DNA of 63,985 nt, filler included, from Octopus bimaculoides (taxonomy: Eukaryota): assembly GCF_001194135.2 (NCBI RefSeq). It is 5 parts of 5 records of this genome, joined end to end, with 100 filler letters (N's around TTAATTAATTAA, not from the genome) between each part and the next. Parts side by side here need not be neighbours in the genome. Positions count along the whole stretch, not along the records: positions 28,955 to 49,004 come from NC_069004.1; 4 more parts are not named here. One strand, given 5' to 3'. The notes under the pieces were generated by a model. It made no database searches, had not been told where the DNA came from, and saw nothing but the letters and a program-made list of their open reading frames with translations. Both the position numbers and the translations under genes were made by a program. Of the stretch, positions 29,767-48,825 are shown piece by piece. Numbering within the stretch: position 1 is the first letter of the stretch; every line of letters begins with the position of its first letter.

Positions 29767-30025
29767 TAACTGGCACTCCGTCGGTTACGGCGACGGCTCT
29801 AGTTGGTCAGATCAACGGAACAGCCGGCTCGGAAATTAACGTACAACTGGCTAAGCGCTCCACAGACACGTATACTCTTAAAGTAGTTCTCAGGGAGATT
29901 CGGCACGACATAGAATGTTTGAAATACGGGGCCGACTCATTTTTGGCAGCTGAGTGAACTGAAGTAATGTGAAATAAAGTGTCTTGCTCAAAGACACAGC
30001 GCCTCGCCGGGAATTGAACTCACCA
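29767..30025 (-). mobile_element. SINE with family D body and family A-type tail
   Basis: Body as in 8590-8902; tail ..gatctgaccaactagagccgtcgccgtaaccgacggagtgcca as in family A. Confidence 0.78.
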
Positions 30026-30240: not shown

Positions 30241-31439
30241 TGTATGTATGTATGTATATATTATGTATGCAAGTATGTATATGTAACATTTGATATAGTA
30301 TTTAAACAAGAGCTAGTAATAGTAGCGCTTATTCGAATGCTATGTGTATGAAATATTTCTCTCTCACTGGATGGAGTACGTTTTTGTTGACTCGAACTAT
30401 AACGGAATAGTAAACTATACACATATATGTGTGTGCGTATGTGTGTGGGCGTGTATGTGTATGTGTTTTCGTGCGTACACATGCATATATGGGGAGAGAG
30501 AAAGAAAGAGTTCGATAACCGACTCCACTATTCTTTATGCGTGATCGATACTTTACATATCGTTCCCATAACAACTAAATGGTAGGTTTGGACTCAGAAT
30601 ACATAAAACCGTTTCAAAAACCGTAAAATGTACAATCTCACGTTCTTAGGACCCCGGCAATCTGCCGCCAGTGTGGCGTTTAATCCGACCACAAATATGT
30701 CTTTACAATCATTCCAATATTCTATTCTCATTCTGTAATAATCCAAAATATATAATTTATAATTTCATATGAAAATATCTACAAAAAATATTCTTTGTTT
30801 TTTTTTCTTTTATTTTCCTCTTTTTATCCATCCTTTCTCGATATATTTTATTTAATTTTATTTATATTATCAAGCTTCAGGGTTTTTTGTCTCCATATTT
30901 CTTTCAATATTTGCATAGAGTTTTTATATATACCGATTCATATTATTATATATATATATACAAGTAAATATACATATTTATTTATTGCATATATATCTGT
31001 ATCAACAAAAATTTTTATTTAGCAATTTCAGAGTTACATGCCTTTTCAGTAAAACTACTGACGCCTATAACAATTGACGTTGTAATACTAATGAATTATT
31101 CATATCATAATTAAAGAAATATTAAAAAGAACCGCTATATACTGTATTGATTCAATGTGTGAGGTTCCAAAGTTATATATATAGAAATAAATTATAATCT
31201 TTCAAATGTAAGAAGTAAGAAATAGCAAAATTGTACTTATTTGGCATGTGATTTGGTTTACAATCAATTATATAGGGCAAGGTAGTTGGCAGCCGTTTAA
31301 AGCATATATGCCATTATTTACACGAGTTTATGTTAGATATAAATTTCACAGCATTTAGTCAGGTATTTCGAAACTGCATAATAGACACTCTATCTTACAC
31401 TTTTCGCCACATATTACAATATGATATATATTACAGTGG

Positions 31440-31590
31440 CTATATGGCAAGAAGCTTGCTTCTCAACAACATGGTTCGGGGTTCAGTCCCACTGCGTGGC
31501 AACTTCAGTAACTGACTTCTACTATATCCACGAGCCGACCAAATCTTTGTGAATGGATTTGGTAGACAGAAACTGAAAGAAGTCTGTCGT
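31440..31590 (+). mobile_element. SINE family B 5' half
   Basis: catggttcggggttcagtcccactgcgtggca..gaaactgaaagaag. Confidence 0.8.
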
Positions 31591-34500
31591 ATATATGTAT
31601 ATGTTTTTCGTCATCACCCAAACCTACACTCACACCACATAACCACAAGTGGATTATTGACGATATTTTTCTCACTTTCCTCCTTCTTCCCTTTCAACAT
31701 TCTTGTTTTTTTGCTGTTTCCGAAGAAGAGGTATGCTCGAAATGTAAAACAACAAATCTTTTCCTTCTCCGAGTGTCCTATTAATACATCGTTTGTGCTA
31801 CGTCCTCTTATTGTTTTTTCTGTCTTTTGAATTANNNNNNNNNNNNNNNNNNNNNNNNNNNNNNNNNNNNNNNNNNNNNNNNNNNNNNNNNNNNNNNNNN
31901 NNNNNNNNNNNNNNNNNNNNNNNNNNNNNNNNNNNNNNNNNNNNNNNNNNNNNNNNNNNNNNNNNNNNNNNNNNNNNNNNNNNNNNNNNNNNNNNNNNNN
32001 NNNNNNNNNNNNNNNNNNNNNNNNNNNNNNNNNNNNNNNNNNNNNNNNNNNNNNNNNNNNNNNNNNNNNNNNNNNNNNNNNNNNNNNNNNNNNNNNNNNN
32101 NNNNNNNNNNNNNNNNNNNNNNNNNNNNNNNNNNNNNNNNNNNNNNNNNNNNNNNNNNNNNNNNNNNNNNNNNNNNNNNNNNNNNNNNNNNNNNNNNNNN
32201 NNNNNNNNNNNNNNNNNNNNNNNNNNNNNNNNNNNNNNNNNNNNNNNNNNNNNNNNNNNNNNNNNNNNNNNNNNNNNNNNNNNNNNNNNNNNNNNNNNNN
32301 NNNNNNNNNNNNNNNNNNNNNNNNNNNNNNNNNNNNNNNNNNNNNNNNNNNNNNNNNNNNNNNNNNNNNNNNNNNNNNNNNNNNNNNNNNNNNNNNNNNN
32401 NNNNNNNNNNNNNNNNNNNNNNNNNNNNNNNNNNNNNATACATATATATAATTGTATAAAATAATAATGTATAAGAGTAAAATTGTATTGTAATTTGCCT
32501 CAGGTACTGCAATATGTTGAAATAATATAAACATCTCAAAAACCTTTGAGCAGCTAAGTTGCCATCAATTAACGAAAGCAACGAAAATTATTGAATGTTA
32601 TGTGTTGTATGATGATCGTATGTTTAGGAAAATGTTTTCCGTTTTCAAATAACCTCCAAAAGTTCGTGGAAATGCTTTGCTAGCAGCAGGAAATTCTACA
32701 ATGACCTTATCTACAGATTCTCATTATTTTCTATCTTCAGGCTGAGTTGAGAAATATTTCTCAAAATCTAGAATTAATAAACAACTTTTGTAAGGTAATA
32801 TAATCTTTTCACCTTGTTCTTCATTGACGTCTTCTTATATATTTTGCCTAACATCTCAACTACATTGCTTAACGCTTTTATCCAAACATGTATATAATTT
32901 ACTGTATATATTCGTTACACAGTACGGTGCGGGTGCATTTTGGCCGCAAGTTTAATAGGTTTTAGCAACAAAAGATATACGATGTTATATATATAGTTTT
33001 GTCAATTTTGAGTCACACCGGTAAAAGTATTTATTTTACATCTTTCTAAGTTTCTAAATTCTTATGACGTAACCAACGTACAATTCCTGCTGGTAACAAC
33101 TAAGCTTCTAAAGTGGTTGGAGAAAAAAATCGAAGAATTGCTTCAGTAGAGTTGCAAAACGTTTATCATGTTTATAGACGATGTAGGTCTCAGTCACACA
33201 AGTATCTCTTCGGCTTTTTAACCTAATATTCTACATGATATTATTTATGACTATATCTGCTTCGAGTTCCACCGTTAAAAATTGATATACACACTCATAC
33301 ACATATACATACATACATACTTACATACATACATATATATATATACATACATATAAATGTATATAATCACAAAGTCTCGGCAGCCACATTTAATTTTTAC
33401 AGCCAAGCCTGACAAGCAACAACACTGGAAAATTGTAAAGATACGTAGAATATTTCCCAGCTTTCAAATTTGTCGTGCTCTAGTATTTCTAGAGTCCATA
33501 ATTACATATATAAAATGAAAACTGTTTTGAATAATTCATGAGACCTATATGCATTTTCGAAAAAATATTACATTACATTTGTACAAAATTAAATAGTTTT
33601 TGCTTTCTATCATACGTATGTCTGAGAGTGTATATGTGTGTATGTGTGTGTGAGTATGTGTGTGTGAGTATGTGTGTGTGTGAGTGTGTACATATGTGTG
33701 TATATGTGTGTGTGTGTTTATGTATGCATTTACGTTATATGTTTGCATGTATGTATTTACGTTATATGTTTGCATGTATGTATCTGTTCGCACAAGTAAT
33801 TATATGAGAGATGGTATTAAAATAACCATATGGATGTTTTATTATTATCAAGAACTGTGCATTTGGCTTTGATATTCCTTTTACAGATAACCCTTTCGCT
33901 GTGAACAATTTTCATAGAATAAATAGATAAAGCATTTTACTTCTGTTAAAATTATCACCTTTATTTGAAATAAAATTGTATGATCTGTATAAAAATGTAG
34001 GCCATGTATCGAGCTTTTATGTTGAAAGATTAAAATAACTGACAAAATGATCCAGAAAAACAAACATACTATTGCTGTAAGTGTTTCGACAATATTCAGA
34101 TAACCTTTACCAAAATCAGAACCATTCCTGCCGCAAAAATCCAAATCCCAGTAGTGATTAAGTAGTTGTATGGTGTCAACTTAATGTGACAGTCTCCTGA
34201 AGGGAATAATACTACAGTTGGTTGGACGTAGGAAGCTGCACCGCTTCCTGTCGGCCTTGACACTTTTCCTGTGTCCTTACGTTTACGAGGGGGAGACAAG
34301 CACCTCCACCCAGCTAAGCTCTGCATCCAGAGACAGGTTTCTGAGTCTTTGCTCGTCATCAGTAGTGATTGTTCCTACAAAATAAAAAGGCATCACAATT
34401 ATATTTAGAAACAAATTGTTTATCCTAATCTTCGATCTGTGATAAAATCCGCACCACATGATCGAATCTAACAATCTTTACTCCTTCGGTTAGTCTTGAT

Positions 34501-35157
34501 TGTGTAGAAAATCTCTCAAAAAAAAGAAAATACTACAAAAGACAACGAAGAATTTGTCTCAAAGGTATTCGAGCAAAAGCCAACACTATTCTATCGGTTG
34601 AAACTTAATTGTTTGGCAAGAAAACTCGGTCTCTATAAAAGCACCATTGAAATCTTTGGACCCCGACTCAAATACAATTACCTCATCTAGACACAATTGG
34701 CACCAAATCTGAGAAATGTGTGTATGTGTGTGTGTGTGTGACTGTGTCTGTGTCTGCGTGTCTGTGAGTCTGTGTTTTTATGTGTTTGGGTATGTGTGCG
34801 TGTGTGTATTAAATATATCAAATGTGTGGTAAGATATTTGTTTTCCAATCTCAGGGTGTCGGCTTAAATTCGACCCATGACACCTTGGTCGAGTTTCTTA
34901 TACTATAGCCTCGATCCGATCAAAGCCGTCTAAGCTGATTTGGTAGACGGAATATGAGAGAGGCTTGTCATATATACCATATTCTGCCCCATCTCCTTTT
35001 AGTATTAAGTATTAGCAACAGAGATTGATGCATATTTGTTACTATTATATCTAAAGCCGCATGCTGTTCAGGATTCTTTTATGTGGATCTATGAATAGCC
35101 ACCATTGATCAACATTTATGATCTTCGCCGTGTATTTCTCATCACCTGAAATACAGG

Positions 35158-35290
35158 TGCTACTCATTTTTGCCAGCTGAGTAGACTGGAGCAACGTGAA
35201 ATAAAGTGTCTTGCTCAAGGACACCACGCGTCGCCGAGAATCGAACGCATGATCGTGAGCCGAATTCCCTAACCACTAAACCACGCGCCT
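35158..35290 (-). mobile_element. SINE family D 5' part
   Basis: gccagctgagtagactggagcaacgtgaaataaagtgtcttgctcaagg..aaccactaaaccacgcgcct. Confidence 0.82.
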
Positions 35291-35924
35291 TCACTATTTT
35301 ATACATTATTAAATGTATCAATTAAAGAAATAGTCATAAATTTTCTTTTAGTCGTCAATGTTGGTTTGAATACGCAACAGTTGGCTATTGTCCAATTTTA
35401 TTTATTTTTATCATTGACTATCATTTCTGCAGTATGAGTTTAAATATTTACAGAGTGTTCCGTAAGAAAAGTGTCTTCAGCCGTAATAACAATCATAAAG
35501 CTACTATCGTTTTCATTTCAAACGTCAGTGTAATGTATTTGATTAAACATTTAAACGAACAAAGCAGCTTTATAATTTCATCGCAATGACACGCTATTCT
35601 CCTGAAGGTGATACAACTACAACTGACAAAAGACCTGTTAAAATGGCTACTTGGTGGCTATTAATTAGGTTATGCTAGCGAGTAATAGATTGTAATTGAA
35701 AGAATCCATATCGATGTGATATGGTTGTTTAAAAAAAAATATACACAAAATAATTTTTATAAACTAGAATTTATTACAGAGGAAAATTAATAATGTCTAT
35801 TTTAATTTAGAAAGTCGAAAAATTAAAATCGTACAAGAAAATGAAATTTTAAAAAAATTGAATGAAATATTTTTTTATCGTTTACCAGTCTCAGTCATTG
35901 GACTGCGACCATGCTGGGGCACAG

Positions 35925-36264
35925 TCTTGAAGGGTTTTCGTTGAACAGGTCAATCCCGCTAGTTATAGTCTAAGTTTCACACTTACTCTACTTATTCTAT
36001 CAGTGTTATTCGTCGAGTTGTTATGTTACGAGGACGTAAGCAAACCAACACTGGTTGCCGAGCGGTGGTGGATTCAAAGGCAAGCACTAAGACACACACA
36101 CACACACATACGCACAGATATATACGCTCGGCAACCAGTGTTGGTTTGCTTACGTCCTCGTAACATAACAACTCGACGAATAACACTGATAGAATAAGTA
36201 GAGTAAGTGTGAAACTTAGACTATAACTAGCGGGATTGACCTGTTCAACGAAAACCCTTCAAGA
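35925..36264. repeat. Perfect 140-bp inverted repeat (35925-36064 / 36125-36264) with 60-bp spacer
   Basis: Arms compared base by base with no mismatch; the ORF track shows mirror-image peptides on both strands. Confidence 0.97.
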
Positions 36265-37374
36265 TTGCACCTAACTGAATATCTAAAAAAAAAAAAAAGC
36301 AGAAAATTATATTCAATTTACGTTGTGACTTTTTCTGGCACGCGTCAAATGATATACAGCCAAAATTATTGTATACGTGATCATCTCGACATTTTAATGG
36401 GGTTTAGTGTATCTAGGACTATACAATCTAATGTAAAGCCGTTTTGAATAATCAGAGTTATTGGTATTTAATTGTCTTAGTAAGCGCAGCTCTTTCGAGA
36501 TCGGCATAATGTTGCTTCTCTTTAGCATAAAGGAAATTGACGAAGTAGAAATGACAATTAAATACTTAACTAAATAGAATATTAATCGAGACAGATAACC
36601 ACACACGCCCTACGCTTATATGCATATATAATTTTCAGCATTCATCACAGGCCCGCGTATACTTACGTATCCACAATACATAGGCAAGCGAGCGCGCAAA
36701 CAGCCCTTGATCTATGCATGTTCCTTTCACACACACATCAAGGACACTGACACGACCACGATGTATACTCACATACACGCTCACGCATACGCAAACACTT
36801 AGAAACACACACACACACGCGCGCGCATGTATAAGTATATATCTATCTGGTACCCTCATGTATTCCACGTGCACACCTCACATACACCTAAAATCTGACA
36901 CACACCTAAAGCCGCATGCACTTTCAGTCACATGACAAACGCATACGCATTAACAAATGTGCATGTGCACACCAACCAACATCGCTAAACGCTTATATGC
37001 ACGAAGCAAACAAAAACGGACGCTCACACGTACACACCGTAACACATCCGTACACCGTTGTACAAACAACACACATACATACATCACTTCCTATACTAAC
37101 TTTAAGAACCATGTTCACAACTATATATGCACATCCAGGGTCTAGAGGTTAATCAAAAATCATTATCTCCCTTGACTGACCTTTTCACTTAAAATGTAAT
37201 ACAATTTACGGCAGCCATTACTTGTTTTAAAATACCATCTGTAAAAAACACGTGATATTTTCTTAAATAATATTCCGTCTAAATTAAATTTTTCTAATAC
37301 ATACTCATTCCTGAAAACACACTATACATTGTACACCCAAAATTGTAATTAAAATTGAACGCACTCTAAGTCTT

Positions 37375-37375
<1 letters not shown>

Positions 37376-37465
<90 letters not shown>
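37376..37465. repeat. Pure (CA)n tract of ~90 bp
   Basis: Read directly. Confidence 0.97.
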
Positions 37466-37470
<5 letters not shown>

Positions 37471-37699
37471 ATATATTGTGAGTGTGTCGCATAATACACC
37501 ACGAGATATATGCCAATATGCACATACACACATACTACTATTATATACACCCATAGGCATTCACACGTCCTGCTCACGCACGTACGTGAACATATCTCCA
37601 GACGCAGTACAAGCAACGCAACACACACGCCCATACGACAGATGGTTAGTTTGCTTTGACCTTTAGTTTCTAGCGTTATTAGCATGGGTGCCATCACGA

Positions 37700-37960: not shown

Positions 37961-39277
37961 GAGCTGTTTCATTTGTGACATGATCGAAGTACAAGTTGGA
38001 GTAGCAATACATTTTCAACGCCCGTACTTTTGTCTGCAGTGGACTTCAAGTTTTGGCTTCGGTGCAGAAAATGGAAAAAACCAGTGTATGCAGACAACAG
38101 ATTTTACTTTTCAAGTTAATGTTCGTATCTCTCCATTTCACGATGAGATTTATTTATTCATATTTTTCTGTCCTATTATTATCATAATGCTTACAGAACA
38201 TTCATGTCATGATTCATTGTTAATAATGACTTTCAAATATTTGAACTTCTGCCCTGTCTCTAGTTTTTGTCCTTATGATGAAACGTTTTCATAAACTCGG
38301 GCGTTTTAGCGCGGATTTACATTCAGAACTTGATGGAAGCGCTATCAAGGTGGCTAATACAATCGATTCCTCCTCCTTTCTTGTCAGTCGATGAAAATCA
38401 TGAATATAGTTCAAATTTTTGATGCTCCTCCCTTCGGCGCTGACTATCCACACACACTCTTCTAGAGCACAACAGAGAGAAGAATAAAGTATATTAATAT
38501 CAACTATGAAATTAATTAGGAAATAAGAAATGACAAAAGTGAAACTGATAACAGGAAAATATGAAGATATGAAAACAGTCTTTTCATTAAGCAAACAAAT
38601 AAATATTCCAACAAGTAATGGACTTCATCAACCATTCCAGCTACAGATAGAAAATAAATCGAGAAAATAAGCCTCGGTCCAACATCTCCGATGCTTACCT
38701 GCCTACGTACATATGTTAGATAAGGGGCTGGGGGCACTGTGGCTGCATAACCAGCTTTGGAGTGAGAGAACAGAAACGTGCAACCTGGGAAATCTCATGA
38801 AAACATTTTATGAACTGAGATTACCGCGTAAATTAGTTTTTATGAGATCAGATGTAGTTGAATGAAGTGGTTATATGGTAAAATCAATGGGCATTATATT
38901 AATATGGATGATATGATAAAGTCAATCGATATGATATTTATATGGAAGATATCATAAAGTTAATCGATATCATATTAATATAAAAGTTCTGATAAGGTCA
39001 ATCAATAATATATCAATGTTATTATGATTGAAGATATCTTGAAAAGGTTCCACGCAAAGAGTTTGTTGGGATAATAGATTTGTCAGGAGAAATAGAATGG
39101 TTTTGTTGTTATATCATAGAGTTAGTCGATAATATATACATAGCAGAGCGGATAAGCGTAGAGTACAGAGTACAGTTGAAAGAATTATGATGTCTGGATT
39201 ACATAATAAAACGTTAGGATTAGAGTTATAGAAAGGGTTAAACGCTCGGTTAAGGACGTAACTTGTTTGTAACCGCT

Positions 39278-39780
39278 TCACCTTATTCGTTTCCGCCATT
39301 GCACTGCGACCGTACTGGGGCACCACTTTAAATGCTTTTAGTGCAACAAATTCAACTCAGTATTTATACTTTTTGTCTTTTTCTATTTTTGTTTGTTAGT
39401 CGGTTACATATTATATCGCTTTGTTTTACCGAACAGCTAAGTTACAGGGGTGTAAACATGCCAGCACCGATTGTCAAATGGTAGGTATGACAGACACAAC
39501 AGACACGGGCATAAAGACACACATACAAACACACACAAACACTCACACGCAAACACATACACACACACACACGCATACATGCACACACTCACATACACAT
39601 ACACATATATTAAAATGTTCATATATACGACAGGCTTTTTTCGGTTTCCGCTTGCCAAAATCACTCAGAAGGCATTAGTGAGCTTTCAGCTATAGTAGAA
39701 AGGTATCCATAAGTTACTGCGCAGTGGGACTGAACCGGAAGCCAGGTGGGTGAAAAGCGAGCTTCTTAAAACACATAGCC
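39278..39780 (-). mobile_element. SINE family B, diverged full-length copy with expanded central microsatellite
   Basis: Head and tail similarity to the 63083-63471 copy. Confidence 0.8.
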
Positions 39781-40992
39781 AGGTCTGCGAACGTTATTAC
39801 GCATATGCATTCGCCCAATACGTGTGCATCCATGCATAGGTTCATATGAATATGCATCTACGTATACAGTCATTAAAATAAGTAAAAAAAAAAATGTAAT
39901 AAAAAAGGTAAAATATAAAAGATATATATACACAATGCCGGATGACGTAGATTCAAATGCCCAACCGTACTTCCTTGCCCTGCGTAGCTCATTGCACTCC
40001 TTGTTAGGCGTACATTTATACGTCTCCATGTTTACACTTGCCCTTATAGATACATATATTACATACATATATTACACAAACGCATACGCACACAGGAACA
40101 CTCATTCAAATGTAAGTTAATAAAGTAAAACTAAGATAAAACAGATAAATCAAATAACAAAAAAACGAAGCAACATTACTTCATTTGGATGTGTGATGAA
40201 TAAATAAATGGTGTAAATGAGATTTATGAGCTACGTTAAATAAGAAGTGATGAATCAAATTATGATAAAGGATAGATGATGGATGGTGATAAAACGTGTT
40301 GAAATAAAATATAATAAAGACAATACGATGATAAAAAAATATTGTGTTGTGGCGTAAAAATATATACTAGAAATCGAATGGAATGCTAAGCTAGAGCATA
40401 TTATGTAGGTGATTTTTAGGTGTGGGAGAACAGACCGAATGAAGCAAGAATTCTTGTCAATTAAGATTAGGGAAGATATCATAAATAGCCAATAGGTTTC
40501 GTTTTTATTCTTTCTTATGGTTTTATCTACTTTTCTTGTCAGTAAATTTATTTACATTCTTTAACATACAATATATATATACATACAGAGAGAGAGAAGT
40601 AATGTTTTGTTTATCGCCACATCAATATAGCTGTTCCAGAGTCACCGACGTTACTACTGTCTTTAACCCCAAATGGAGCCTCCTCCAGCTGGTTATTGAT
40701 GCAATCTGTACTCATTATATATTGCAAGCAGGGGAGCGAACCCTTCCCATTTTCTAGCGGGCGAAGGGATCACTAAACCTTCCGGTTTCGGGTTATTTGT
40801 GCCCATCGGTAGTGGTGAACAGCCGTCCGCTAGAGGTAAGCAATAACTCGCTCCAGCTCGTAGACTCATCCTGGGATCAAAACTATTGTAACATCGATTT
40901 CTATAGAACAACTATATTGATGTTGCGACAAACATTACTTCTCAATAAAGGTACTACTTTCATCTCTTAAAGAGATTTTCCAATTAGTTACC

Positions 40993-41035
<43 letters not shown>

Positions 41036-42593
41036 ATGTGTACATCCATACCTACACATCTACTTGTAAACTTATAAAGCGATAGAGCGGGACGTCGGGA
41101 TGTTTAGAATCTGCTTGCTTCCATTCTCCACGTGAATATTAAACAGTATGTTAGCCATCACTCAGGTTTAACTTCTCACAGCTAAAAATATAGAAACATC
41201 CACTAAAAAATCGATAAACGAAGACATTTAGGAGATAAATCTACTTAATCTTTATTAGAATATTTTATTATCACTAATACATTTACGTAACAGCTACATG
41301 AGAGTTCCAATTGATTTAAGAAAGAGGCTAGTTCAGATAATTTATGGGTGACGTATATTACTTACCTTCAGCTCATCGACTTTTCTAGCCTCCTTGAAAA
41401 ACAAGTACACACTTTATAAGACTCCTAACAGGTAAATTATGATGGCAGTTTGGAGTGTTCAACCTTTTAAGCAAAGCTTTATCGAACTCTGTGTAACTCC
41501 CGTTGCTATAGTGAATAGTAATATAATTATTCCAGTTGTCTCAAGCAGTTAGCGTATTTGAGCACGGAGTAAATGTGATAGGAAGTGATATTCTAAGAAT
41601 GTCTTTGTTAAATGCTGCTGTTTCTTCTTTCTCTCGTTCGTTCGTTCTTTCTGTCTTTGCTTCCATCCTTTGCCTTTTAATTTTGTTTCTTGTCTTTCAA
41701 TCTTGAGTTCGTTCTTGTTTTTTCTGCACTTATGAACCCTCAGCAGTCGGAATAATTTCGTTCTTAGTTCGTTGTGAATAACAACGCTAGTGTTTCAATT
41801 CCAAGTCAAGTGTAGTTTTCTTTTTCTAACTTGAACACAAAAGCTGTTTAGAAAATCACAAAAGCTCAGAATTTCGTTTGTACTCATTTATATATTGATT
41901 GTTTGATCGATTTAAGTGAATAACTTCTAGCAAATACACAAAACCTCGCATTTTTGTGAAGCTGTGGTTAATCAATAATGGATTACAATAGGTGACAAGG
42001 TATTTTGATTATTGTTTCCAGAAAAATGTAGAACAAAGCTGACTCGTTCACAATTCGAACCTAGATTGTATGAAGGATTAAGGATTTGTACGCATCTCTT
42101 TCCAGGCGCACTGAGCAATTATTCAAGCTAAGGGAAGCCATACGAAATATTAACCATGTACAGTAGGTTCTTGAAATGAACATTATATAATAAATTTTCA
42201 TTATAAACATTTTTCTGATTTAAAACACTGTACCGTGATTGGCAAACACTTTAAATTATACTCACAGTGGAACACAATCGAAAACTAATCGGTTTTCAAA
42301 ATTATTTTGTACTCTTGCGATTACTTTGGTAAAGATTTAACATTGTGTAATAGCCTGGATTTCATTTCACAGAAAAGTGCGCATAGCTTGAACTGAAAAT
42401 CTTAGGGAGAACGTACACTTGTTGACCTAGTGAACTGTGAATTTTTATAACATTGTATCACGATAAGTGTGTGTACATACATACATACATACATACATAC
42501 ATACATACATACATACATACATACGTACGTACGTACATACATACATACATCCATACATACGTACGTACATACATACATACATACATACATACA

Positions 42594-42880
42594 TGCGTGG
42601 TAAGAAGCATGCTTTCTAACCACATGCTTCTGAGTTTAGTCCCACTGCGTGGCAAGTGTCTTCTACTATTGGTCCAGGTCGACCAACCCCTTGTCAGTGT
42701 ATATGGTTAATATAAATTGAAAGAAGCCAGTCGTATCTACAAGGGGTTGCTGAAAAGTTCCAGTTTTAAGAGTATCGCGAAAGGCCTGGATGAACACCCA
42801 ACCTTCCGAGTTCTTTTACAGAACTTAGAAAAACCCTTCACAGCGGTGCCCCAGCATGGTCGTCGTCCAAGAACTGACAT
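42594..42880 (+). mobile_element. SINE family B remnant interrupted by a mariner-TIR-like segment (~42738-42830)
   Basis: Head at 42594-42735, then TA|caaggggttgctgaaaagttc, then tail fragment aaccctt..gcggtgccccagcatgg. The mariner assignment is tentative. Confidence 0.6.
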
Positions 42881-45800
42881 GAGTAAATTTTTCTGAAGCA
42901 TTTAATTTTACACAAGATTTATATGTTGTTGACATCATAAGAATTTTAAAAATTAGAGAAAGCATGAAATCTTCCTTTTTGGAAATGAGAAATTAGAAGA
43001 AATTAGAATTACCTTTTACTGATGATATCTGAAAAGAAACAGCAATTTTAGCAATTCATATTAAGCAACACTTTTCAGTGTGTTGTTCCCATTATGACCG
43101 CATTCCAATGAGTGAAAACAAGTAACCGATAAAGGGTATCATAAAATAATCTTAAAAGCTCTGAGGATATCGAAATACTTTGGTTGGTTAATTGTTAAGT
43201 CAGAAACGTGGTTGTATGAGATTAGGACAAACATGAAGTGTTACACCTGATTCTACTTTAAATGAACTCTTGAAATAATATTAATCATTTTGAATACTTC
43301 GACAAAACCAAAAACAGAAATTCCAACACAATTTTCTTTTGGTTTAGGCATTGAGCTTTATTTCTCTTCTATTATTGTTCAAGTGGGTACTGCCAATTTA
43401 GACTAAAATGTAATCGAAATTAAATAGAGTTTGCTTTTAAAAATTATTTGAATAGAAAATACACCACCCTAAAAATTCAGAGAAAATAAAATGAAAAACA
43501 GTATTCAAATGGATTGAAACACCTCTGGTTGTTGGGCGAAACAGTGAATAAAACGATGCAGGTGTTTGGACGTGTATACTCAAGCACTGCATTAATGGAT
43601 ATTGTATCGACACTTTTTGTCTAAGGTATGACATATGACTTTAAACTACGTACAGTAATGAAGCCTGTTTCCGGAGTTTCGGGATTGTGAGGTGCGTGGA
43701 ACCACATCTTAACCCACTATTGTAGAAGTTCTACTCTGATCAGGAATAGTAGCACCTATCAGTGTCTCAGCTATTGGTTAATTAACATGTTACGTGAGAA
43801 GCTCGAAGCATAAACCTTCGCTACCTTGCAAAATGCTTGGAAAATGAAAAGGCTAGGGGAGAGATCCTTGACAGAAAATCAAGGAGTCGAGTACCTCAGG
43901 CAGTCAGGCGTCCCACTTGGCACCCTTCCGGCAGTGGTTCTCCAAGCCTGTCAGGCAATTTACATTGGAGAAGATCACTCCGATGTAAAGCCTACAGATT
44001 TATGGTCACCAATTTCTGCGACTGCAGTTCTTTAGACATGATCATGAAGATAGGTCCCAAAGAATAAATCCTAGTGAGTAAGCCCAGGGTTTCTAGGTCC
44101 ACCTCTGCCCTACACATGTCTTGGAAGCTGTGTATTAAGGAATTACCGTACATTGCAACTAGAATATCTCTGTTTACCATCTTACTGTAGAATAGTGCTC
44201 CATTGTATCTTTTCCCTTTTATCTCAGCTACCAAAATATTTCTGATGAAAGTCATGTAGACATTTGTTATAGAATGTTCAAAAACAGGAGGCAAAAGGAA
44301 GCTGTGTTGCGAAACATAACCAAATTAACTTTCGGCGATTGAAAGTATCGAACAAGTAATTCGTATGGGTTCTCCGTAAATTCACATTCGATACTTAAAC
44401 CTGTTGACACCTAAAATGAAAATAGCTTCATCTCTACTTAAATTATCCTCCTAAGAGACCCTGTATCACTAACTATTGAATTAATTCATGAATCAACGCT
44501 TGAGTCAACGAGTCAATGATATGTTCACAAATCTCAAACTTCCTATTTTAAAGTCATCTAAAACTAAAGCGTCCCATCAAAATTTCACCTGAATTTATGC
44601 TCTAAATACCAGTTTATGTATGACAAGGTAATGTTACAAATTTTTTTGCAATATTTTAAATTAATACAAACAAAGATTGTGTATTTCAACAGAAATATAG
44701 CAATGAAAGGGTTAAAATATACTCATTGTATAACTTTACATTTTAAATTTGTAAAACTGTACTAGAAAGTTATATGATAGATTTAACGTTGAAAAAGTAT
44801 AATTGACTTAATAACGTTTGTAAAAAAAACTTACATTACTGGCTAGTATTAGCCTATTTACTGCTGTTCAATACTTTCTGAATAGACAAATTAGAACGTT
44901 TTAAATCTCAAGGATTTAGATATCTTTGAATAGTACCATAGAAAATAAAAACCTAACCTACTGAAATATATCGGTCTTGTTAAAAATGAATAGAACTACA
45001 AGGTTTTGTTTCATTGAAGCCGTTTCGAATTCTAGACTTAGAAAGATCTTCAACTGAGCCTGCAGCTTTAAATTCCTTGAGAGGCTTCACACGTGTTGGG
45101 GTGGTAGAGAGTGATCAAACTTAAAGTTTGTTTTTTCATGTTCTGAATTGATAGGATTGATGCGTGAGATTGTACATTTTTTAGATCAATGAATATTTTC
45201 TCGCTTGTTGATAATGACATTTTCTTAAAATATAAAAGCTACACACACACACATATATATGCGTGTGTATGTATTTTTATATGCATATATATATATATAT
45301 ATATGTATATACATATACATACATACACACGTATAAGTATGTACACACACATTTATAGCTTCTTATAGAAATTCGTGTCACAAAGATTCACTGATGCAGT
45401 TTCTATATAAAAAAAGCATATCCTCTACAATATGTATTGTTGGGCATATCCATCTCACTCGTTCGACATAAAACAACTTACACACACACACACACACACA
45501 CACANNNNNNNNNNNNNNNNNNNNNNNNNNNNNNNNNNNNNNNNNNNNNNNNNNNNNNNNNNNNNNNNNNNNNNNNNNNNNNNNNNNNNNNNNNNNNNNN
45601 NNNNNNNNNNNNNNNNNNNNNNNNNNNNNNNNNNNNNNNNNNNNNNNNNNNNNNNNNNNNNNNNNNNNNNNNNNNNNNNNNNNNNNNNNNNNNNNNNNNN
45701 NNNNNNNNNNNNNNNNNNNNNNNNNNNNNNNNNNNNNNNNNNNNNNNNNNNNNNNNNNNNNNNNNNNNNNNNNNNNNNNNNNNNNNNNNNNNNNNNNNNN

Positions 45801-45886
45801 NNNNNNNNNNNNNNNNNNNNNNNNNNNNNNNNNNNNNNNNNNNNNNNNNNNNNNNNNNNNNNNNNNNNNNNNNNNNNNNNNNNNNN

Positions 45887-48031: not shown

Positions 48032-48076
<45 letters not shown>

Positions 48077-48429
48077 NNNNNNNNNNNNNNNNNNNNNNNN
48101 NNNNNNNNNNNNNNNNNNNNNNNNNNNNNNNNNNNNNNNNNNNNNNNNNNNNNNNNNNNNNNNNNNNNNNNNNNNNNNNNNNNNNNNNNNNNNNNNNNNN
48201 NNNNNNNNNNNNNNNNNNNNNNNNNNNNNNNNNNNNNNNNNNNNNNNNNNNNNNNNNNNNNNNNNNNNNNNNNNNNNNNNNNNNNNNNNNNNNNNNNNNN
48301 NNNNNNNNNNNNNNNNNNNNNNNNNNNNNNNNNNNNNNNNNNNNNNNNNNNNNNNNNNNNNNNNNNNNNNNNNNNNNNNNTATATATATATATATATATG
48401 AGCGTATATATGTTATCTTTCTTTTATCT

Positions 48430-48825
48430 TCTTTTATTTGTTTCTTTTACTTGCCATTAGACTGCAACCATACTGATGCACCGCCTTCAGGGATATTTAC
48501 TTGAATGAATTCACTCCAGTACTGTTTCTCAGCCAGATAATTACTGTATCGGTCACTTAAGTTGAACACCAGTTGTCCAGCGTTAGTGGTGAACGAACAT
48601 AAAAATGACACACACAAACACATACACGTATACAAATACACACATAGATATATAGACATATATAAATATATGATGGACTTTTTTCAGTTTCCGTCTACCA
48701 AATAAACTCATAAGGCTTTGATCGGCTTGAGGCTACAGTTGCCTATGTTTCTACACAGTAGGACTGAACCCGGAACCACGTGGTTGAGAAGCAAGCTTCT
48801 TACCTCACAGCAACGTCTGCGCCTA
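48430..48825 (-). mobile_element. SINE family B, diverged copy
   Basis: Head, central microsatellite and tail recognisable. Confidence 0.8.

What the first reader, a model, noticed from the sequence alone, without database searches (positions are those of the whole stretch)
35925..36264. Zero-mismatch 140-bp inverted duplication of a decayed SINE tail
Seen: arms 35925-36064 and 36125-36264 are exact reverse complements around a 60-bp spacer, yet the arm sequence differs at many positions from other family B tails in the window. It is therefore one copy duplicated very recently or kept identical, not two insertions. It lies between candidate minus-strand exons. Established: long perfect hairpins are ADAR and Dicer substrates and extrude cruciforms, and coleoids have very extensive A-to-I editing. 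Inference: a template-switch (foldback) duplication creating a new hairpin RNA, or a foldback assembly artefact.
Basis: partly seen in the sequence, partly recalled or inferred. Interest (0 to 1): 0.7.

Follow-up and report, generated by a model that had tools for sequence, protein, structure and literature searches.

The report
Perfect inverted copy of SINE tail
A 140-base stretch of an old, decayed octopus SINE has been copied once, backwards, right next to itself, giving a perfect hairpin-forming repeat. It is most likely a recent replication or repair slip (less likely an assembly error), and nothing shows that it does anything.

Summary
Arms 35925-36064 and 36125-36264 are exact reverse complements (140 nt, 143 nt with one mismatch) around a 60-nt spacer. 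This is the only long exact repeat in the 20-kb piece.

The left arm lies inside an old SINE tail whose sense strand is the minus strand. That copy carries its own 3' end (35876-35924) and its internal microsatellite, which forms the spacer. The right arm holds only the middle segment, without the SINE 3' end, so it is not a second retrotransposition.

The left copy is about 64% identical to a 20-copy consensus, and 48 of its 58 substitutions are private. It therefore decayed in place, and the identical arms are far younger than the insertion. This rules out two insertions, and it rules out twin priming or reverse-transcriptase snap-back at insertion time.

The best explanation is a single recent in-situ inverted duplication by template switch or fold-back repair, unusually long for that class. 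An assembly artefact remains possible (about 0.2). The locus sits in a gap-rich short-read-style octopod assembly, but it is 3.5 kb from the nearest gap and its junctions share at most 2 nt.

I found no exons, no RNA-family match and no outside copy. The hairpin-RNA, ADAR and Dicer role is untested. Verdict: an ordinary kind of event, low to moderate interest.

The parts
35876..35924 (-). 3' end of the source SINE copy (sense on the minus strand: ...CTGTGCCCCAGCATGGTCGCAGTCCAATGACTGAGACTGGTAAAC). It is present only beside the left arm.
   Evidence: Aligns to the 3' end of the family consensus and of other copies. The flank right of the right arm shows no significant similarity to it (shuffle p 0.4-0.9).
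35925..36064 (-). Left arm: the source segment, the middle of the SINE tail, contiguous with the rest of that SINE on both sides.
   Evidence: Exact reverse complement of 36125-36264. Part of the 229-nt match to the full-length copy at 39270-39800 and to the Octopus consensus.
36065..36124 (-). Spacer, the loop of the hairpin. It is the 5' part of the same SINE tail plus the SINE's internal (TA)n(TG)n microsatellite. It is not palindromic.
   Evidence: In SINE sense it reads GCG|TATATATCTGTGCGTATGTGTG..., like the canonical body|microsatellite boundary GTCG|TATATAT seen in other copies.
36125..36264 (+). Right arm: the inverted copy of the left arm. It reads SINE-sense on the plus strand, has no SINE 3' end and no microsatellite of its own, and sits where the SINE body and head would be expected.
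   Evidence: 140/140 complementary. Its boundaries fall inside the SINE consensus. No SINE head or body sequence lies to its right.
36265..36267 (+). Possible 3-nt extension of the right arm (TTG against the expected CTG): one mismatch then two matches. This is either 2-nt microhomology at the outer junction or chance.
   Evidence: outward match string .||...

Best explanation
This is a real, evolutionarily recent, single-step inverted duplication made in place. An old SINE copy (sense on the minus strand) had already decayed here. During replication or break repair, a DNA 3' end at the edge of the SINE's internal (TA)n(TG)n microsatellite switched template. It copied 140-143 nt of the neighbouring SINE tail in reverse-complement orientation and then rejoined the chromosome. 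The copied segment either was inserted beside a 5'-truncated SINE or overwrote the SINE's own body and head. The result is a perfect 140-bp stem with a 60-nt loop. What is shown: the geometry, the source-to-copy direction (left to right), and that the duplication is much younger than the SINE. What is inferred: the template-switch or fold-back mechanism. No function is indicated. If the region is transcribed through, the RNA would be a long perfect duplex of the type that ADAR hyper-edits and Dicer cuts, but that is untested.
For: 1. Exact 140-nt arms and a 60-nt spacer, unique in the piece.
2. The left arm is embedded in a continuous SINE tail, whereas the right arm lacks the SINE 3' end and the 5' tail part. 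The left is therefore the source and the right cannot be an independent target-primed insertion.
3. The source copy is 64% identical to a 20-copy consensus, with 48 of 58 substitutions private. No copy in 95 kb of octopod DNA is more than 70% identical to it. Arms separated since insertion should differ at tens of sites, and they differ at none.
4. The inner junction lies at a microsatellite, a classic site of fork stalling. In SINE sense it reads GCG|TATATAT like the canonical GTCG|TATATAT boundary, which allows a 2-nt CG microhomology.
5. Template switching is documented to create perfect stems in one event (PMC10710096, PMC8794818). Fold-back templated inverted insertions at breaks are also documented (abstract of PMC11724301, listed).
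6. Against a simple artefact: the hairpin lies inside a 13-kb gap-free stretch, 3.5 kb from the nearest N run. The spacer is not self-complementary, so the structure is not a de Bruijn-graph turn-around at a palindromic (TA)n. The two novel junctions share at most 2 nt with the sequence they replace, so a k-mer walk could not have jumped there without reads that carry the junctions.
Against: No independent sequence of the locus could be obtained. Seven exact-ORF look-ups, DNA scans of three collections and a protein search of the hairpin ORF all returned nothing for this locus. An assembly error therefore cannot be excluded. A 140-nt copy is long for the class: the largest template-switch pattern in PMC8794818 was 59 bp, and fold-back insertions at yeast breaks are mostly about 5-34 bp (abstract of PMC11724301). 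There is no clear microhomology at the inner junction and none demonstrable at the outer one. Long perfect inverted repeats with short spacers are unstable, so a priori rare. No perfect inverted repeat of 40 nt or more with a short spacer was found in 75 kb of O. bimaculoides sequence; the longest exact inverted matches there are dispersed SINE copies kilobases apart.
Confidence: 0.62

Rival explanations
1. Assembly artefact. The second arm does not exist in the genome and was created during contig extension, gap closure or from chimeric (fold-back) library molecules.
For: The piece is a gap-rich, scaffolded draft with N runs of 603, 382 and 304 nt. The same style is seen in O. bimaculoides GCA_001194135.2, which has 713,915 contigs (PMC10700109). 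That assembly demonstrably contains local false duplication: L001 31848-32352 is repeated at 32411-32915 across a 10-N gap. The arm length of 140-143 nt is close to a short-read length. Zero mismatches is what a collapsed or copied arm would give. Fold-back artefacts are well known in sequencing libraries (PMC12870357).
Against: The hairpin is 3.5 kb and 9.2 kb from the nearest gaps, inside continuous sequence. The artefact seen in L001 is direct and sits on a gap, so it is a different kind. The spacer is asymmetric, so the structure is not a palindromic-k-mer turn-around. Both novel junctions have at most 2 nt of overlap, so several chimeric reads agreeing on two exact junctions would be needed. 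The documented fold-back read artefacts are read-length palindromes with no or minimal spacer, not 140-nt arms ending at a defined outer junction.
Confidence: 0.2
2. An older inverted duplication whose arms are kept identical by repeated intrachromosomal gene conversion. A variant is two old inverted SINE copies with one recent 140-nt conversion tract.
For: Perfect identity on a decayed background is also what arm-to-arm conversion produces in larger palindromes (established knowledge of sex-chromosome palindromes).
Against: The identity ends abruptly on both sides. The right copy has no diverged remnant of the SINE 3' end and no tail 5' part of its own, because the whole spacer belongs to the left copy. 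There is therefore no flanking homology to start a conversion between two old copies. Arms of 140 nt are short for efficient conversion. One recent event is more parsimonious.
Confidence: 0.07
3. The structure was made at the time of retrotransposition. In SINE sense it reads inverted 5' segment followed by direct 3' segment, as in twin priming. It also fits a first-strand cDNA that snapped back on itself and self-primed.
For: The architecture in SINE sense (minus strand) is antisense-B, then microsatellite/S, then B, then the 3' end. This is the 5'-inverted layout described for L1 (PMC2912911). The plus strand reads exactly like a cDNA that folded back after reaching the microsatellite. The left flank is T-rich next to the SINE 3' end.
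Against: The arms would be as old as the insertion, yet the copy carries about 48 private substitutions in about 200 nt while the arms show 0 in 140. Twin priming joins adjacent, essentially non-overlapping parts of the RNA, whereas here the two segments overlap completely. 5'-inverted SINEs are very rare, with one Alu among thousands. No significant target-site duplication flanks the composite, though that test is weak because even about 90%-identical copies of this family showed none with the same crude method.
Confidence: 0.05
4. Two independent SINE insertions in opposite orientation (as with inverted Alu pairs), or a multi-copy fold-back element or MITE with 143-nt terminal inverted repeats.
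For: Inverted neighbouring repeats are the usual source of long dsRNA in animals, and octopus is rich in them (PMC5625713).
Against: Independent copies of this family in the same window are about 47-64% identical to the consensus and 56-61% identical to the left copy, not 100%. The right arm lacks the obligatory SINE 3' end. The left arm is in register with the rest of a SINE, which an inserted fold-back element would not be. No similar element occurs in 75 kb of O. bimaculoides, where the best match is 68% over the ordinary tail.
Confidence: 0.02

Closest known systems
Template-switch mutations (TSM; quasi-palindrome or four-point model of Ripley and of Loytynoja & Goldman; Monttinen & Loytynoja 2022, 2023)
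   Same: A reverse-complement copy of adjacent sequence is created in one event and gives a perfect stem where none existed. The source is left intact, and the loop is the sequence between the source and the switch point.
   Different: The copied tract of 140-143 nt is several times longer than typical reported events; the largest TSM-like pattern in PMC8794818 was 59 bp. The ancestral state is not available, so the four switch points cannot be verified.
Fold-back (snap-back) templated inverted insertions and inverted duplications at double-strand breaks (yeast and cancer fold-back inversions)
   Same: A 3' end folds back on its own strand and copies it, giving an inverted duplication with a short spacer (abstracts of PMC11724301, PMC10622511 and PMC7467729, listed).
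   Different: Those events are either very short (about 5-34 bp) or very large and chromosome-scale. This one is intermediate in size and was resolved by rejoining after 140 nt. No priming microhomology is visible at the inner junction.
Inverted SINE pairs (for example inverted Alu pairs) as ADAR substrates; long near-perfect dsRNA loci of Octopus bimaculoides
   Same: SINE-derived arms in inverted orientation within a few hundred bases. If transcribed, they would form the long near-perfect duplex that hyper-editing targets. Octopus has an exceptionally high fraction of such loci (4.4e-3 of 50-bp loci) and the strongest hyper-editing signal (PMC5625713).
   Different: Here the arms are not two insertions but one copy duplicated. 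The identity is 100%, not 'nearly perfect'. Transcription and editing are not shown.
Twin-priming 5'-inverted retrotransposon insertions
   Same: The order of segments in element sense is an inverted 5' part followed by a direct 3' part.
   Different: The two parts are the same 140 nt rather than neighbouring parts. The arms are far younger than the insertion.

Membership tests
Template-switch / fold-back inverted duplication | The new segment is the exact reverse complement of nearby sequence on the same chromosome. | tested here: met
   140/140, 60-nt spacer.
Template-switch / fold-back inverted duplication | A single event that post-dates the surrounding sequence, so the copy carries the source's private mutations. 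| tested here: met
   48 of 58 substitutions of the source against a 20-copy consensus are private, and all of those within the arm are shared by both arms.
Template-switch / fold-back inverted duplication | The ancestral or outgroup allele lacks the second arm. | not testable with these tools
   No other assembly, reads or orthologous locus could be retrieved.
Template-switch / fold-back inverted duplication | Microhomology at the switch points (usual, not obligatory). | tested here: inconclusive
   The inner junction shows none against the present sequence, with a possible 2-nt CG if the ancestral SINE body followed the microsatellite. The outer junction shows a possible 2-nt TG.
Pair of independent SINE insertions | Each copy has its own 3' end or tail, and divergence between copies is typical of the family. 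| tested here: not met
   The right arm lacks the 3' end. Family copies are about 56-70% identical to the left copy, against 100% between the arms.
Twin-priming 5'-inverted insertion | Inverted and direct segments come from adjacent parts of one RNA, and both date from the insertion. | tested here: not met
   The segments overlap completely (140 nt). The arms are identical on a decayed copy. The segment layout alone matches.
Twin-priming 5'-inverted insertion | Target-site duplication flanking the whole composite. | tested here: inconclusive
   No significant shared word or alignment. The same crude test also fails on younger copies of the family.
Fold-back transposon / MITE | Terminal inverted repeats bounded by a target-site duplication, with many copies in the genome. 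| tested here: not met
   The left arm continues in register into the SINE 3' end, so it is not an element terminus. No copy occurs in 75 kb of O. bimaculoides.
Known RNA gene (miRNA or other Rfam family) | Match to a curated covariance model. | tested here: not met
   No hit at gathering score. The best E-value hits are 0.13 and 0.67, far below threshold.
Assembly artefact (gap-closure duplication or palindromic turn-around) | Adjacency to a gap, or symmetry about a self-complementary k-mer. | tested here: not met
   The nearest N runs are 3.5 and 9.2 kb away. The spacer is not self-complementary.
Assembly artefact (any kind) | No reads span the novel junctions. | not testable with these tools

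The most novel reading that the evidence does not exclude
The locus is real and transcribed: a newborn hairpin-RNA gene made in one step. An unusually long (140-nt) template switch overwrote a SINE's own head with an inverted copy of its tail, producing a perfect 140-bp dsRNA. That RNA would feed the octopus ADAR hyper-editing or Dicer/endo-siRNA pathways and could silence or sponge other copies of the family. It would be a snapshot of hairpin birth before any mismatch has accumulated.
Probability: 0.06. Interest if true: 0.5.

Novelty: new member of a known kind. Interest (0 to 1): 0.25.

Why it matters
If real, this is a clean, datable example of how a perfect long hairpin can arise in a single mutational step from ordinary decayed repeat DNA. 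It would also extend the size range usually quoted for template-switch events. Such events supply raw material for dsRNA, for editing substrates and, rarely, for new small-RNA genes, in a lineage with the heaviest RNA editing known. If it is an artefact, it is a useful warning: counts of perfect dsRNA-forming loci taken from fragmented short-read cephalopod assemblies need read-level checks. Either way, it is one locus of a known kind with no evidence of function.

Tried and rejected
1. Independent copies of the locus. Exact-product look-ups of the two 64-aa ORFs that run through the hairpin, and of three neighbouring ORFs, found none on record.
2. A protein search with the 88-aa hairpin ORF found no candidate.
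3. DNA scans were made with an arm-specific 25-mer (metagenomes) and a family-level 22-mer (metagenomes, prokaryote genomes, viral contigs). All gave 0 hits.
4. Host gene. Pfam on 10 ORFs and one protein search of 23 concatenated long ORFs gave nothing, so no orthologous intron could be fetched.
5. Rfam at gathering and at E-value threshold, and tRNA search, gave nothing.
6. Target-site duplication. Shared-word and local-alignment tests were not significant. A tempting candidate (AGATATTCAGTTA / AAATATTTCATTCA, abutting a possible remnant GGTGCAA of the SINE 5' end) does not beat chance. The test also has little power in this family.
7. The idea that the right flank is a diverged SINE 3' end plus poly(A), which would make the right arm an independent copy, was rejected.
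8. A de Bruijn-graph turn-around at palindromic (TA)n was rejected because the spacer is asymmetric.
9. The 'inverted repeats' of 180-350 nt reported by the repeat finder elsewhere in the piece are N runs.

Full report
**Observation.** Positions 35925-36064 and 36125-36264 are exact reverse complements (140/140). The pair extends to 143 nt with one mismatch (35922-36267), and the spacer is 60 nt. Complementarity stops sharply on both the inner and the outer side.

A k-mer scan of the whole 20-kb piece finds no other exact non-microsatellite repeat longer than 29 nt. The larger 'inverted repeats' that the repeat finder lists elsewhere are N runs paired with N runs. As a single strand the region folds into one uninterrupted stem: RNA -281.7 kcal/mol (z = -34) and DNA -183.7 kcal/mol (z = -35).

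**What the arms are.** A full-length member of the same repeat family lies at 39270-39800. It shows the element's layout:
- a tRNA-like head with a B-box-like GGTTC..GTCC motif;
- a body ending ...GTCG;
- an internal (TA)n(TG)n microsatellite;
- a roughly 200-nt 'tail' ending ...CCAGCATGG.CGCAGTC.AATGACTGAAAC.AGTAAA.

I recalled a consensus of the common Octopus SINE from memory. It aligns to the window copies, and its translations hit Octopus bimaculoides proteins at 67-95% identity, which validates the recollection.

By this layout the left arm belongs to a SINE tail whose sense strand is the minus strand. Its parts are the 3' end at 35876-35924, the arm segment at 35925-36064, and the 5' part of the tail plus the internal microsatellite at 36065-36124, which is the whole spacer.

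The right arm is an inverted copy of the middle segment only. It has no SINE 3' end, since the flank at 36265-36300 is not significantly similar to it. It has no tail 5' part of its own, and no SINE head or body follows it. A target-primed retrotransposition always carries the element's 3' end, so the right arm is not a second insertion. The left copy is the source and the right arm is the copy.

**Age argument.** I fetched 75 kb of O. bimaculoides GCA_001194135.2 (L001 and L002) and aligned 17 tails from it with three from the window. Young copies there are 85-92% identical to the consensus and old ones 66-77%. The window's left copy is 64% identical.

Of its 58 substitutions, 48 are shared with at most two other copies. 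Its best pairwise identity to any other tail is 70%. The differences are therefore overwhelmingly private, that is, acquired in place. Two segments separated since the insertion should now differ at tens of positions, but they differ at none of 140.

This rejects three readings: two independent insertions, twin priming, and a reverse-transcriptase snap-back at the time of insertion. That holds even though, read in SINE sense, the locus has the '5'-inverted plus 3'-direct' layout of twin-primed L1 copies (PMC2912911). The escape route is that the copy is a young product of a rare, very divergent master. That has no support in 95 kb, but it cannot be closed without the whole genome.

Zero mismatches in 140 nt bounds arm-to-arm divergence only at about 2% (95%). 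'Recent' therefore means recent relative to the SINE, not necessarily last week. A short-read assembler could also have homogenised one or two real differences.

**Mechanism.** The geometry is source, then 60-nt loop, then reverse-complement copy, then unrelated flank. This is the geometry of a template-switch mutation or a fold-back-primed repair. A 3' end leaves its template at the microsatellite, copies the neighbouring tail backwards for 140-143 nt, and is rejoined.

Such events are documented to create perfect stems in one step (PMC10710096, PMC8794818). Fold-back templated inverted insertions at breaks are also documented (abstract of PMC11724301). This one is long for the class, since 59 bp was the largest pattern in PMC8794818 and 5-34 bp is typical at yeast breaks.

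In SINE sense the inner junction reads GCG|TATATAT. Canonical copies read GTCG|TATATAT at the body-microsatellite boundary. This hints that the ancestral SINE continued into its body and head and that these were overwritten, with CG as a 2-nt microhomology. The hint is weak, about 1 in 16 by chance for the dinucleotide.

A candidate decayed target-site duplication would fit that picture: AGATATTCAGTTA / AAATATTTCATTCA, next to a possible GGTGCAA remnant of the SINE 5' end. It is not statistically distinguishable from chance, and even younger family members show no clear duplication with the same crude test. The mechanism is therefore inferred, not shown.

**Artefact.** The piece carries N runs of 603, 382 and 304 nt. 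The same variable-gap style is seen in the O. bimaculoides loci. That assembly has 713,915 contigs (PMC10700109). The window shares its repeat families at 70-89% identity. The window therefore comes from an octopod genome assembled in that fragmented, short-read manner.

That assembly does contain local false duplication: L001 31848-32352 recurs at 32411-32915 across a 10-N gap. But that case is direct and sits on a gap. The hairpin lies 3.5 and 9.2 kb from the nearest gaps. Its spacer is not self-complementary, which excludes a graph turn-around at palindromic (TA)n. Its two novel junctions overlap the replaced sequence by at most 2 nt, so a k-mer walk could not have produced them without reads that carry them.

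Documented fold-back read artefacts are whole-read palindromes (PMC12870357). I put the artefact at about 0.2. It cannot be lowered further without reads.

**Context and function.** No coding exon is demonstrable in the piece. Ten of the long ORFs have no Pfam hit, and 23 concatenated long ORFs have no homologue.

The left copy lacks the Pol III head, so any transcription would be read-through. Rfam and tRNA searches are empty. The two 64-aa ORFs that cross the hairpin and share both ends are a trivial consequence of the symmetry, not genes.

Octopus is already known to have an exceptionally high density of long near-perfect dsRNA-forming loci and the strongest hyper-editing signal among animals surveyed (PMC5625713). 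Imperfect short-range hairpins are visible in the O. bimaculoides loci fetched here. The class is therefore known and common. This member stands out only by being perfect, longer than usual for a template switch, and derived from one copy.

**Verdict.** The functional gloss is untested. My confidences are:
- real recent in-situ inverted duplication: 0.62;
- assembly artefact: 0.20;
- homogenised older duplication: 0.07;
- retrotransposition-time origin: 0.05;
- other: the remainder.

Novelty: a new member of a known kind. Interest: 0.25.

Noticed in passing
L001 31848-32352 and 32411-32915 (O. bimaculoides GCA_001194135.2, CM046608.1): About 500 bp of sequence is repeated almost exactly, in direct orientation, on both sides of a 10-N gap at 32401-32410. 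This looks like unmerged overlapping contigs, a false tandem duplication in the public assembly, inside or near the LMBR1-domain gene.
   Followed up: partly
window 39270-39800 (minus), 31437-31605 (plus), 42593-42890 (plus), 48597-48821 (minus), 34898-34976: Further copies of the same tRNA-head SINE family. One is full length, two run into N gaps, and one is a fragment. The three tails aligned (left copy, 39276-39520, 48400-48600) are only 47-64% identical to the Octopus tail consensus. The 75 kb of O. bimaculoides holds roughly 8-9 copies at 82-92%. The window has no young copy, which may be chance or a somewhat different species.
   Followed up: partly
window 29920-30022 and 35147-35249; L001 13154-13250: A second interspersed repeat family, 83% identical between the two window copies and 80-89% identical to an O. 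bimaculoides copy. Translations contain VSLSKTLYFTLLQ.TQL.KMS. It was not identified.
   Followed up: no
window 36600-37480: A roughly 900-bp strongly C/A-skewed tract (GC skew -0.37) ending in a perfect (CA)~50 array at 37375-37470, a few hundred bases right of the hairpin. It is degenerate microsatellite DNA that could add to replication difficulty in this region.
   Followed up: no
L001 23097-23147/23178-23228; 31473-31559/31709-31795; 32142-32247: Imperfect short-range hairpins in O. bimaculoides: 51 nt at 92% with a 30-nt loop, 87 nt at 87% with a 149-nt loop, and a 106-nt near-palindrome. They may be older events of the same kind or MITEs.
   Followed up: no
window 35992-36186 (minus) and 36003-36197 (plus): Two 64-codon ORFs on opposite strands cross the hairpin and encode identical N- and C-terminal peptides. 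This is a mechanical by-product of the palindrome. Neither is on record anywhere.
   Followed up: yes
window 45578-45927/48031-48380 and 48046-48411: the repeat finder reports 180-350-nt 'inverted repeats' here that are only runs of N matched to runs of N (gaps 45505-45886 and 48077-48380).
   Followed up: yes
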